DNA of 63,989 nucleotides, filler included, from Lenisia limosa (taxonomy: Eukaryota; Protista; Breviatea): NCBI GenBank assembly GCA_001655205.1. It is 13 parts of 13 records of this genome, joined end to end, with 100 filler letters (N's around TTAATTAATTAA, not from the genome) between each part and the next. Parts side by side here need not be neighbours in the genome. Positions count along the whole stretch, not along the records: positions 12,769 to 28,580 come from LPNZ01010977.1; 12 more parts are not named here. One strand, written 5' to 3'. Both the position numbers and the translations under genes were made by a program. A model generated the notes under the pieces. That model saw only the letters and a program-made list of their open reading frames with translations. It was not told the origin of the DNA and did not search any database. This document shows positions 18,758 to 19,422 of the stretch, in pieces; position 1 is the stretch's first letter; every line of letters starts with the position of its first letter.

Positions 18758-19422
18758 ATGGGTGATTTTGATTTTTTATTCAAAATTGTGCTCATTGGTG
18801 ATTCAGGAGTAGGAAAGTCCAATCTTCTCAGTAGATTCACAAGAAATGAATTCAATTTAGAGTCAAAATCGACAATTGGAGTTGAATTTGCAACTCGAAG
18901 TATTCAGGTGGAAAATAAAATTCTAAAGGCGCAGATATGGGATACTGGTATGTTCTCCGATTATTTATGTTGCTGGACAGGAACGTTTCAGAGCAATAAC
19001 TTCTGCATATTATAGGGGTGCTGTTGGTGCACTGTTAGTTTATGATATAACCAAGTATTCAAGTTTCGAGAACGCGCAACGGTTTATTTTCTTGTTTATT
19101 TTGCTGGCTGAACGAACTGAAAGATCATGCTGATTCAAAAATTGTTGTGATGTTAGTAGGCAATAAGACTGATCTTAAACACTTGAGATCCGTAAAATGT
19201 GAGGATGGCGCTTATTTTGCAGAGCAAAATTCCATTTCCTTCATTGAAGCTTCTGCATTGGATTGCTGGAATGTAGAAACAACATTTGAAGCACTTTTGC
19301 GTCAGGTATACCATGCAATGGCATCAGGCTTTGAAAGTAATACTAAAGCAGTTGCTGAAGTTGCTAGTGGTGAATCACTGGTTTTAACCACTTCCAACAG
19401 GAAAAATAAGACGTGTTGTTAA
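18758..19422 (+). CDS. RAB11: Rab11 GTPase; needs two non-canonical micro-introns (18948-18972, 19082-19103) removed
   Basis: [43 protein letters not shown]|[27 protein letters not shown]|WLNEL...[14 protein letters not shown]-terminal CC then TAA. Confidence 0.9.

What the first reader, a model, noticed from the sequence alone, without database searches (positions are those of the whole stretch)
18758..19422. Intact Rab11 interrupted by two tiny GT...TG (non-AG) introns
Seen: removing GTATGTTCTCCGATTATTTATGTTG (18948-18972, 25 nt) restores WDT|AGQE, and removing GTTTATTTTCTTGTTTATTTTG (19082-19103, 22 nt) restores QR|WLNEL. The result is a full Rab11 with all G-boxes and a terminal CC. Both inserts start GT, end TTTAT.TTG and are followed by CTGG; neither is a multiple of 3. 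The nearest downstream AGs give frameshift or stop, and sliding the junctions gives no AG. Known: spliceosomal introns almost always end in AG, and 22-25 nt is near the smallest known size. Inference: either a real micro-intron class with TG acceptors, or a recent pseudogene or retrocopy (for example from cryptic-donor use) whose ORF has not yet decayed. Two independent identical AG-to-TG changes seem unlikely.
Basis: partly seen in the sequence, partly recalled or inferred. Interest (0 to 1): 0.85.

Follow-up and report, generated by a model that had tools for sequence, protein, structure and literature searches.

The report
Rab11 gene with two TG-ending micro-introns
A highly expressed, intact Rab11 gene carries two tiny introns (25 and 22 bases) that are precisely removed from its mRNA although they end in TG, not the near-universal AG; this is unusual because TG ends were previously known only as optional alternatives next to a normal AG site.

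Summary

- **Coding sequence.** Removing 18948-18972 (25 nt) and 19082-19103 (22 nt) gives a 205-aa Rab11 with all G boxes and a C-terminal CC.
- **RNA.** A poly(A) RNA-seq contig (722 nt, depth 111) runs colinearly over 18691-19459 and lacks exactly those 25 and 22 nt.
- **DNA.** DNA contigs from the same study and an independent ENA assembly contain both inserts, at the same depth as the unique flanks. No insert-free DNA form is seen.
- **Intron features.** Both inserts start with GT, are T-rich, contain no AG, and share TTTAT with an A at -6, followed by (G/T)TTG|CTGG. The nearest AGs (+8, +20) would truncate the protein.
- **Intron 1 position.** It sits at the exact position and phase where other eukaryotes' Rab11 genes have a canonical GT-AG intron.
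- **Local comparison.** A neighbouring gene has an RNA-supported 33-nt GT-AG intron, so AG is used at the one other RNA-confirmed intron here.

Best explanation: U2-type ultrashort spliceosomal introns whose 3' site is TG and is the only productive site. In humans, TG acceptors are only ever alternatives to a nearby AG.

Not established: the organism (an animal with ultrashort introns, dicyemid- or myxobolid-like), whether this is a genome-wide class, and the isoform ratios.

The parts
18691..18757 (+). 5' UTR (minimum extent, set by the start of the RNA contig)
   Evidence: RNA contig record 13 begins at 18691; the ATG is at 18758.
18758..18947 (+). Rab11 exon 1: Met1 to Thr63 plus the first base of the Ala64 codon (P-loop GDSGVGKS, switch I, WDT)
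   Evidence: Translation. Best PDB hits are Rab11A/B, E 1.5e-31, about 89% identity to human Rab11A over 62 aa.
18948..18972 (+). Intron 1: 25 nt, GT...TG, phase 1. 5' end GTATGT; TTTAT with A at -6; no internal AG; 52% T.
   Evidence: Left out of the RNA contig (25 nt at about 18946, X2 depth 111.5 of 111.5) and present in the DNA contig (X1, 0 of 41.5 without it). Composition. A canonical GT-AG intron sits at the same position and phase in foreign Rab11 loci L006 and L007.
18973..19081 (+). Rab11 exon 2 ([36 protein letters not shown] plus 2 bases of the Arg codon)
   Evidence: Translation; colinear with the RNA contig.
19082..19103 (+). Intron 2: 22 nt, GT...TG, phase 2. 5' end GTTTAT; TTTAT with A at -6; no internal AG; 73% T.
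   Evidence: Left out of the RNA contig (22 nt at 19081, depth 111.5 of 111.5) and present in the DNA contig. Composition.
19104..19422 (+). Rab11 exon 3 coding part ([11 protein letters not shown] ... GNKTD ... EASAL ... KTCC) including the TAA stop at 19420-19422
   Evidence: Translation. Best PDB hits are Rab11A, E 1.1e-23.
19423..19459 (+). 3' UTR (minimum extent, set by the end of the RNA contig)
   Evidence: RNA contig record 13 ends at 19459.
18964..18976 (+). Shared 3' junction motif TTTATGTTG|CTGG (intron 1)
   Evidence: TTTATNTTGCTGG with up to 1 mismatch occurs only twice in the piece, both at insert 3' ends; 0.12 expected. The pattern was derived from these two sites, so the count is only descriptive.
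19095..19107 (+). Shared 3' junction motif TTTATTTTG|CTGG (intron 2)

Best explanation
The locus is a functional, strongly expressed Rab11 gene. Its pre-mRNA contains two ultrashort (25 and 22 nt) U2-type spliceosomal introns with a normal GT 5' end and a TG 3' splice site instead of AG. TG is the only productive 3' site for each intron. Shown: both segments are in the genomic DNA and are precisely absent from poly(A) RNA, which restores a complete Rab11 frame. Inferred: removal is by the spliceosome. Each intron has a yUnAy-like TTTAT whose A lies 5 nt upstream of the terminal G, and this is probably the branch point. A U-rich tract fills the space to the 3' end. The terminal G is the first G at a workable distance from that A. 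In introns this short, the 3' site is probably fixed mainly by spacing from the branch point and by the terminal G. From published spliceosome structures (my own knowledge), that G pairs with the 5' G+1 in the catalytic centre. The usual A at -2 would then be dispensable. Intron 1 occupies an old, widely shared Rab11 intron position, so its TG most likely derives from an ancestral AG by an A-to-T change in a T-rich intron.
For:: the X2 poly(A) RNA contig (722 nt, depth 111.5) spans 18691-19459 with exactly 47 gapped bases (25 + 22). The X1 DNA contig (1540 nt, 18563-20102) has 0 differences, and its depth of 41.5 matches the unique flanks (34-44). No X1 contig lacks the inserts; an independent ENA SPAdes contig is 100% identical over 15002-22160 and includes both inserts; only the TG ends at 18972 and 19103 give WDTAGQE and QRWLNEL; the AG alternatives truncate the protein or delete the G3 box; both inserts start with GT (GTATGT matches the 5' end of the RNA-supported 33-nt GT-AG intron at 21062-21094), are 52-73% T, lack AG and have TTTAT with A at -6; foreign Rab11 genes have canonical GT...AG introns at exactly the intron 1 position and phase; no significant RNA structure brings the ends together. 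Literature: GT-TG U2 introns exist in humans (PMC2374985, PMC4176328); animals with median intron lengths of 22-27 nt exist (PMC13644364, PMC6543705).
Against: No direct evidence for spliceosomal chemistry (no lariat or branch-point data). The RNA and DNA come from different samples of one study. In humans, TG acceptors are never the sole 3' site, and AG-to-TG mutations abolish use of the site (PMC2374985), so sole-site use here needs a lineage-specific relaxation that has not been demonstrated. Published splice-site logos for ultrashort-intron animals show AG (PMC13644364). The organism was not identified.
Confidence: 0.8

Rival explanations
1. The segments are removed at the DNA level in the transcribing (somatic) nuclei, like short internal eliminated sequences, and the sequenced DNA is mostly the unprocessed form.
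For: Removal is precise and the segments are short and AT-rich. Tiny direct repeats flank the junctions (TG for insert 1, G for insert 2). Some candidate host lineages (dicyemids) are reported to eliminate chromatin and to form circular DNA (PMC6543705 mentions 24,065 'circular' contigs).
Against: No DNA contig lacks the inserts, and depth over the gene (41.5) equals that of the unique flanks. A whole-animal DNA preparation would be mostly somatic. The inserts carry spliceosomal hallmarks (GT start, yUnAy, U tract), and intron 1 sits at a conserved spliceosomal intron position. The 1-2 nt repeats are no more than chance.
Confidence: 0.06
2. The segments are excised by a non-spliceosomal RNA pathway, either IRE1/RtcB-type (as for the 23-26 nt XBP1/HAC1 intron) or tRNA-endonuclease bulge-helix-bulge type.
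For: The size (22-25 nt) matches the XBP1 intron, the ends are not GT-AG, and both 3' junctions read UUG|CUGG, which loosely resembles CNG|NNGN.
Against: The 5' junctions (CUG|GUAU, ACG|GUUU) do not fit CNG|NNGN, and position 1 of the 3' sites is U rather than C. The folds show no twin hairpins or BHB, and stability is no better than shuffles (z +0.28 to +2.0). Both segments begin with GT, like the neighbouring canonical intron. Rab11 has no known link to the unfolded-protein response.
Confidence: 0.04
3. The mRNA comes from another copy or allele: an intronless paralogue or retrogene, or an allele with AG at both sites. This locus itself would then not be spliced at TG.
For: RNA and DNA are from different samples (S1, S2). 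Contigs drop rare variants. The lineages under consideration have high heterozygosity (1.24% in D. japonicum, PMC6736024).
Against: The RNA contig matches this locus over 722 nt apart from 2 letters. Neither is listed in the table of other letters, which shows only differences away from a contig's end, so both presumably lie near the contig's ends. The match extends through both UTRs, which a retrogene elsewhere would share only if very recent. No insert-free DNA contig was found in 71 Mb of X1 contigs laid on the region. Two coincident A/T polymorphisms exactly at both acceptor -2 positions, both fixed as T in every DNA assembly, is improbable.
Confidence: 0.06
4. The locus is a recent pseudogene or retrocopy with two small frame-breaking insertions.
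For: The frame is broken in the genomic sequence, and the gene has no long introns.
Against: The gene is transcribed at the highest depth in the region, with both inserts exactly removed, giving an intact and highly conserved Rab11.
Confidence: 0.02

Closest known systems
[quoted passage not shown] 2007, PMC2374985; PMC4176328)
   Same: GT at the 5' end and TG at the 3' end, with a pyrimidine at -3. A U2-like context and an AG within 28 nt downstream (+8 and +20 here).
   Different: Human TG sites are only ever alternatives to a used AG, never the sole site, and AG-to-TG mutants are not spliced at TG. Here TG is the only productive site, the only form assembled from RNA, and it occurs twice in one essential gene. 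The introns are 22-25 nt rather than normal length, with a putative branch A only 5 nt from the 3' end.
Ultrashort spliceosomal introns of dicyemids and myxobolid myxozoans (PMC13644364, PMC6543705, PMC2222250, PMC6736024)
   Same: Length of 22-33 nt, a reduced 5' signal (GTa/GTATGT), weakly conserved A residues shortly upstream of the 3' end, and no long polypyrimidine tract. The genomic context is compatible: gene-sparse, repeat-rich, 37% GC, with N-gapped scaffolds.
   Different: Published logos and annotations show AG at the 3' end. I found no report of TG acceptors. Membership of the organism in either lineage was not established here.
Ultrashort introns of ciliates (Stentor 15-16 nt, Paramecium about 25 nt) and the Bigelowiella nucleomorph (18-21 nt)
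   Same: Size range, with the branch A very close to the 3' end.
   Different: Those introns are GT-AG. This gene uses the standard genetic code, has an animal-type Rab11, lies in gene-sparse DNA and shows no macronuclear-type amplification.
IRE1-dependent unconventional intron of XBP1/HAC1
   Same: Size (23-26 nt in animals) and a non-AG end.
   Different: No twin stem-loops and no CNGNNGN loops at the 5' junctions. The GT start and a conserved spliceosomal intron position argue for the spliceosome.
Rab11/Ypt31 subfamily small GTPases
   Same: All G boxes are present, the best hits are Rab11A/B, and there is a C-terminal CC prenylation motif.
   Different: Slightly short (205 aa) with a divergent C-terminal hypervariable region, and it ends in -CC rather than -CCxxx.

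Membership tests
Rab11 subfamily GTPase | Ras-superfamily G1-G5 boxes intact (GxxxxGKS, T in switch I, DTAGQE, NKxD, SAL/K) | tested here: met
   [27 protein letters not shown] and EASAL in the spliced translation.
Rab11 subfamily GTPase | Closest to Rab11 rather than to other Rab subfamilies | tested here: met
   Top PDB hits are all Rab11A/B (E 1.5e-31 and 1.1e-23), followed by Ypt31/32, RABA1a and Rab25. Rab1, Rab8 and Rab2 are at least 1e-16 and 1e-13.
Rab11 subfamily GTPase | C-terminal double-cysteine geranylgeranylation motif | tested here: met
   The protein ends in ...NKTCC followed by a stop.
U2-type (major) spliceosomal intron | Absent from mature mRNA and present in genomic DNA | tested here: met
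   25 and 22 nt are left out in the RNA contig and present in the DNA contigs; also present in an independent assembly.
U2-type (major) spliceosomal intron | GT (or GC) at the 5' end | tested here: met
   GTATGT and GTTTAT. GG is the only other placement common to both.
U2-type (major) spliceosomal intron | AG at the 3' end | tested here: not met
   Both end in TG. No placement of either junction gives AG.
U2-type (major) spliceosomal intron | Branch-point adenosine in a yUnAy context with a pyrimidine-rich 3' part | tested here: met
   By sequence only: UUUAU with A at -6 in both, followed by U-rich tracts. Branch use was not shown.
U2-type (major) spliceosomal intron | Lariat formation and dependence on snRNPs | not testable with these tools
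   Needs lariat reads or biochemistry.
TG-AG tandem acceptor class (Szafranski 2007) | TG used only as an alternative to a used AG within 28 nt | tested here: inconclusive
Contigs cannot exclude minor isoforms.
U12-type (minor) intron | 5' RTATCCTT and a TCCTTAAC branch site | tested here: not met
   The 5' ends are GTATGTTC and GTTTATTT, and there is no TCCTTAAC.
IRE1/XBP1-type unconventional intron | Both junctions in 7-nt loops (CNG|NNGN) of twin hairpins | tested here: not met
   The 5' junctions do not fit, and the folds show no such hairpins (z +0.28 to +2.0).
Programmed DNA elimination (IES-like) | An insert-free DNA form exists; the segment is bounded by TA or pointer repeats | tested here: not met
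   No DNA contig lacks the inserts, and depth equals the flanks. Only 1-2 nt repeats are present.

The most novel reading that the evidence does not exclude
This animal's spliceosome accepts TG (perhaps any NG placed about 5 nt after the branch A) as a regular, sole 3' splice site in part of its ultrashort introns. These two introns would then be the visible tip of a genome-wide class. Annotation pipelines restricted to GT-AG would have missed that class, breaking gene models and depressing the completeness scores reported for such genomes. It would be the first case of constitutive non-AG acceptors in major-type introns of an animal, and a natural system for asking what the -2 adenosine is really needed for.
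Probability: 0.35. Interest if true: 0.85.

Novelty: new variant of a known kind. Interest (0 to 1): 0.68.

Why it matters
The 3' AG is one of the most invariant signals in eukaryotic gene expression. The best-studied exceptions, human TG acceptors, work only beside a normal AG. Here two TG acceptors in one essential, highly expressed gene are the only productive sites, in introns near the lower size limit for splicing. If this holds at read level and extends to other genes, several things follow. It would show that in extremely short introns the acceptor can be specified by geometry plus a terminal G. It would give a simple natural substrate for structural and biochemical work on second-step site selection. 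It would also mean that gene sets of ultrashort-intron animals (dicyemids, myxobolids) built with GT-AG-only predictors contain systematic errors. In practice, this Rab11 would be called a pseudogene or split gene by any standard annotation.

Tried and rejected
- **Organism identification failed.**
  - Rfam found nothing in the piece.
  - Pfam on the ten longest other ORFs gave only a DDE_1 transposase remnant.
  - The neighbouring ORF at 21487-21747 has no homologue but itself.
  - Rab11 searches found no close relative beyond this locus's own ORF, only 46-63% identity over the C-terminal part.
  - The D. japonicum reads cited in PMC6736024 carry later accession series than the 2016 runs found here, so a dicyemid assignment stays a guess; a myxobolid is equally open.
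- **Full-length spliced protein not searched.** It has no reference, and I did not type it in.
- **Sister-species orthologues.** A search with exon-1 and exon-3 ORFs found none.
- **Generality of TG acceptors.** This could not be tested, because read laying and the look-up of sequencing runs were exhausted and only this 15.8-kb piece is available.
- **Intron 2 position.** Conservation was not established. Clytia (L002), L004, L005 and L007 have no intron there.
- **Translational bypassing.** Rejected, because the RNA itself lacks the segments and there are no matching take-off and landing codons.
- **RT template switching.** Rejected, because there are only 1-2 nt repeats and the spliced form is the sole, abundant product.
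- **Ciliate germline origin.** Rejected, because the gene uses the standard code with a TAA stop 37 nt before the transcript end, has an animal-like Rab11, and shows uniform DNA depth.
- **TTGCTGG enrichment.** The motif occurs 7 times against 1.9 expected. It is not an acceptor signal: four of the seven sites have no intron context, and CTGG follows a normal AG acceptor in a foreign Rab11.

Full report
**Observation.**
- An ATG at 18758 opens a Rab-type P-loop ORF that breaks after WDT.
- Deleting 18948-18972 (25 nt) and 19082-19103 (22 nt) gives a 618-nt ORF of 205 aa ending in ...KTCC-TAA, with all five G boxes. All three unspliced frames are closed.
- The junctions can slide by 2 nt (TG) and 1 nt (G). 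The only terminal dinucleotide pairs common to both inserts are therefore GT..TG or GG..TT.
- Neither insert contains an AG. The nearest downstream AGs (+8, +20) yield 74- and 102-aa truncated products. The one in-frame AG for insert 1 would delete GQERFR.
- The exon pieces match Rab11A/B far better than any other Rab in the PDB: 1.5e-31 and 1.1e-23, against about 1e-16 for Rab1/Rab8 and 1e-13 for Rab2.

**Decisive evidence.** Two public runs of one 2016 study hold this sequence: X1 (DNA-like, 71 Mb of contigs) and X2 (poly(A) RNA). I laid them on 17000-21500.
- One X2 contig of 722 nt, depth 111.5, covers 18691-19459. It carries exactly two gaps: 25 nt left out at about 18946 and 22 nt left out at 19081.
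- That contig has two other differing letters. Neither appears in the table of other letters, which lists only differences away from a contig's end, so both presumably lie near the contig's ends.
- An X1 contig of 1540 nt covers 18563-20102 with no differences. Its depth of 41.5 is the same as the unique flanks (34-44).
- No X1 contig lacks either insert.
- An independently assembled ENA contig (L001) is 100% identical to 15002-22160, inserts included.

The inserts are therefore genuine DNA and are precisely absent from the abundant mature transcript. The pseudogene/retrocopy option is rejected. Base-call error (AG read as TG) is very unlikely at about 40x in three assemblies, although these may share the same reads.

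**What removes them.** The features point to the spliceosome.
- Both inserts begin with GT. GTATGT is also the 5' end of the only other RNA-supported intron in the stretch, a canonical 33-nt GT...AG intron at 21062-21094 in a neighbouring gene.
- Both are T-rich (52% and 73%) and contain TTTAT, which fits yUnAy, with the A at -6. In intron 2 this is the only A outside the 5' splice region.
- In both, the terminal G is the first G lying 5 nt after that A. The TG directly after the A in intron 1 is not used.
- RNA folding of the junction regions is no better than shuffles (z +0.28 to +2.0). No bulge-helix-bulge or twin IRE1-type hairpins appear, and the 5' junctions do not fit CNG|NNGN.

**Intron 1 is at an old intron position.**
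- Many Rab11 ORF fragments from unrelated genomic contigs lose homology at '...AQIWDTG' followed by junk.
- In two loci I fetched, exon 1 ends GAT ACx G|GT. L006 reads ...GATACGG|GTAAGT...ACATAG|CTGGCCAAGAG, and L007 reads ...GATACAG|GTATGT....
- This is the same position and phase as intron 1 here, and in L006, where the 3' end was also read, the intron is a canonical GT-AG one.
- Intron 1 is therefore the homologue, or at least the positional equivalent, of an ordinary spliceosomal intron, and its TG is most simply a derived AG.
- This also explains part of the shared motif. The CTGG after the acceptor is Ala-Gly (GCU GGN) in intron 1 and Arg-Trp (CGC UGG) in intron 2, and it follows a normal AG in L006.
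- The 13-nt pattern TTTATNTTGCTGG occurs only at these two sites in the piece, but the pattern was derived from them.
- I found no conserved counterpart for intron 2's position.

**Rivals.**
- Somatic DNA deletion (IES-like). No deleted DNA form is seen, depth is uniform, and the repeats are only 1-2 nt.
- IRE1- or tRNA-type excision. Neither the motif nor the structure fits.
- An unsampled intronless copy or an AG allele. The transcript matches this locus through both UTRs, and no such DNA contig exists.
- RT template switching. The spliced form is the sole, abundant product.

Together I give these about 0.2.

**Context.**
- The surroundings are gene-sparse, repeat-rich (DNA depth up to about 1250 against 41), about 37% GC and N-gapped. 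A pogo-like DDE_1 remnant is also present.
- The Rab11 is animal-like.
- Animals with median intron lengths of 22-27 nt are known: dicyemids and myxobolid myxozoans (PMC13644364, PMC6543705, PMC2222250).
- The D. japonicum statistics (67.5 Mb, 36.7% GC, 49% repeats, 5,012 genes; PMC6736024) resemble this piece. However, its deposited reads carry later accessions than the 2016 runs found here.
- I could not identify the organism.
- The published logos for these lineages show GTa at the 5' end, and AG at the 3' end for D. japonicum and the non-myxobolid myxozoans. They come from annotation with a standard gene predictor guided by transcript and protein evidence (BRAKER3 for H. salminicola; PMC13644364).
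- I found no report of TG acceptors in these lineages.

**Comparison with the known.**
- GT-TG U2 introns exist in humans: GNAS, TSPYL2 and 36 genes (PMC2374985, PMC4176328).
- There the TG is 'exclusively' an alternative to a nearby AG (28 nt or less) and never the sole site. AG-to-TG mutations are not spliced at TG.
- Here an AG lies within 28 nt in both cases (+8, +20), so an early AG-dependent recognition step cannot be excluded.
- The TG products are nevertheless the only productive ones and the only ones assembled. This happens twice in one essential gene, in 22-25-nt introns.
- That makes this a new variant of a known kind. Whether it is a genome-wide class is untested, and I put that at about 0.35.

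**Limits.**
- All read evidence is at contig level, so there are no isoform ratios and rare alleles are hidden.
- The RNA and DNA samples differ.
- No lariat evidence exists.
- The organism is unknown.
- Only one 15.8-kb piece could be examined.

Noticed in passing
window 21062-21094 (+), with 20972-21173: A low-abundance RNA contig (depth 2.6) supports a canonical 33-nt GT...AG intron (GTATGTTAATTTCTGGTGTTATATCTTCTTCAG) in a neighbouring plus-strand transcript. AG acceptors are therefore in normal use in this genome.
   Followed up: partly
window 21487-22070 (+): An orphan ORF (MGFTNTGEDEF...) has no homologue beyond itself and no Pfam hit. It is followed by candidate micro-introns inferred from sequence only: 21749-21779 (31 nt, GT..AG), 21858-21883 (26 nt) and 22042-22067 (26 nt). 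The first could instead end at 21794 (TTG|CTGGACA, 46 nt, also in frame), resembling the intron 1 acceptor. No RNA data were available to decide.
   Followed up: partly
L006:3198-3280 and L007:1389-1400: Foreign Rab11 genes carry a GT-AG intron at exactly the WDT|AGQE phase-1 position, and many other genomic ORF fragments stop at 'IWDTG'. By contrast, ORF fragments from two fishes point to exon ends at TSA|YYR and ELR|DHA, and Clytia has its intron 3 codons earlier.
   Followed up: partly
window 20001-20228: A 21-nt tandem repeat (10.8 copies, 80% matches) lies inside a spurious 151-aa ORF (HPIIRFV repeats). The adjacent 20171-20321 has DNA depth of about 1030 against 41, so it is a high-copy element.
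   Followed up: no
window 17755-17905 and 18208-18509: High-copy dispersed repeats lie immediately upstream of the Rab11 gene (DNA depth 700-1250 against about 41), with many variant contigs and partial joints.
   Followed up: no
window 26770-27900: A GC-rich block (51% against about 37%) carries a degenerate pogo/Tigger-like DDE_1 transposase remnant on the minus strand (27465-27707, E 4.4e-5). Its composition is foreign to the surroundings.
   Followed up: no
window 22161-25444: The independent ENA contig L001 runs from 22160 straight into about 25445. An 81-nt sequence is present at both 22080-22160 and 25445-25525. The 3.3-kb segment after the N gap in the window is therefore absent from that assembly, which could be a structural polymorphism, a repeat collapse or a scaffolding insertion.
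   Followed up: no
window 23860-23907, 23409-23475: An (AC)24 microsatellite and a perfect 24-nt x 2.8 tandem repeat.
   Followed up: no
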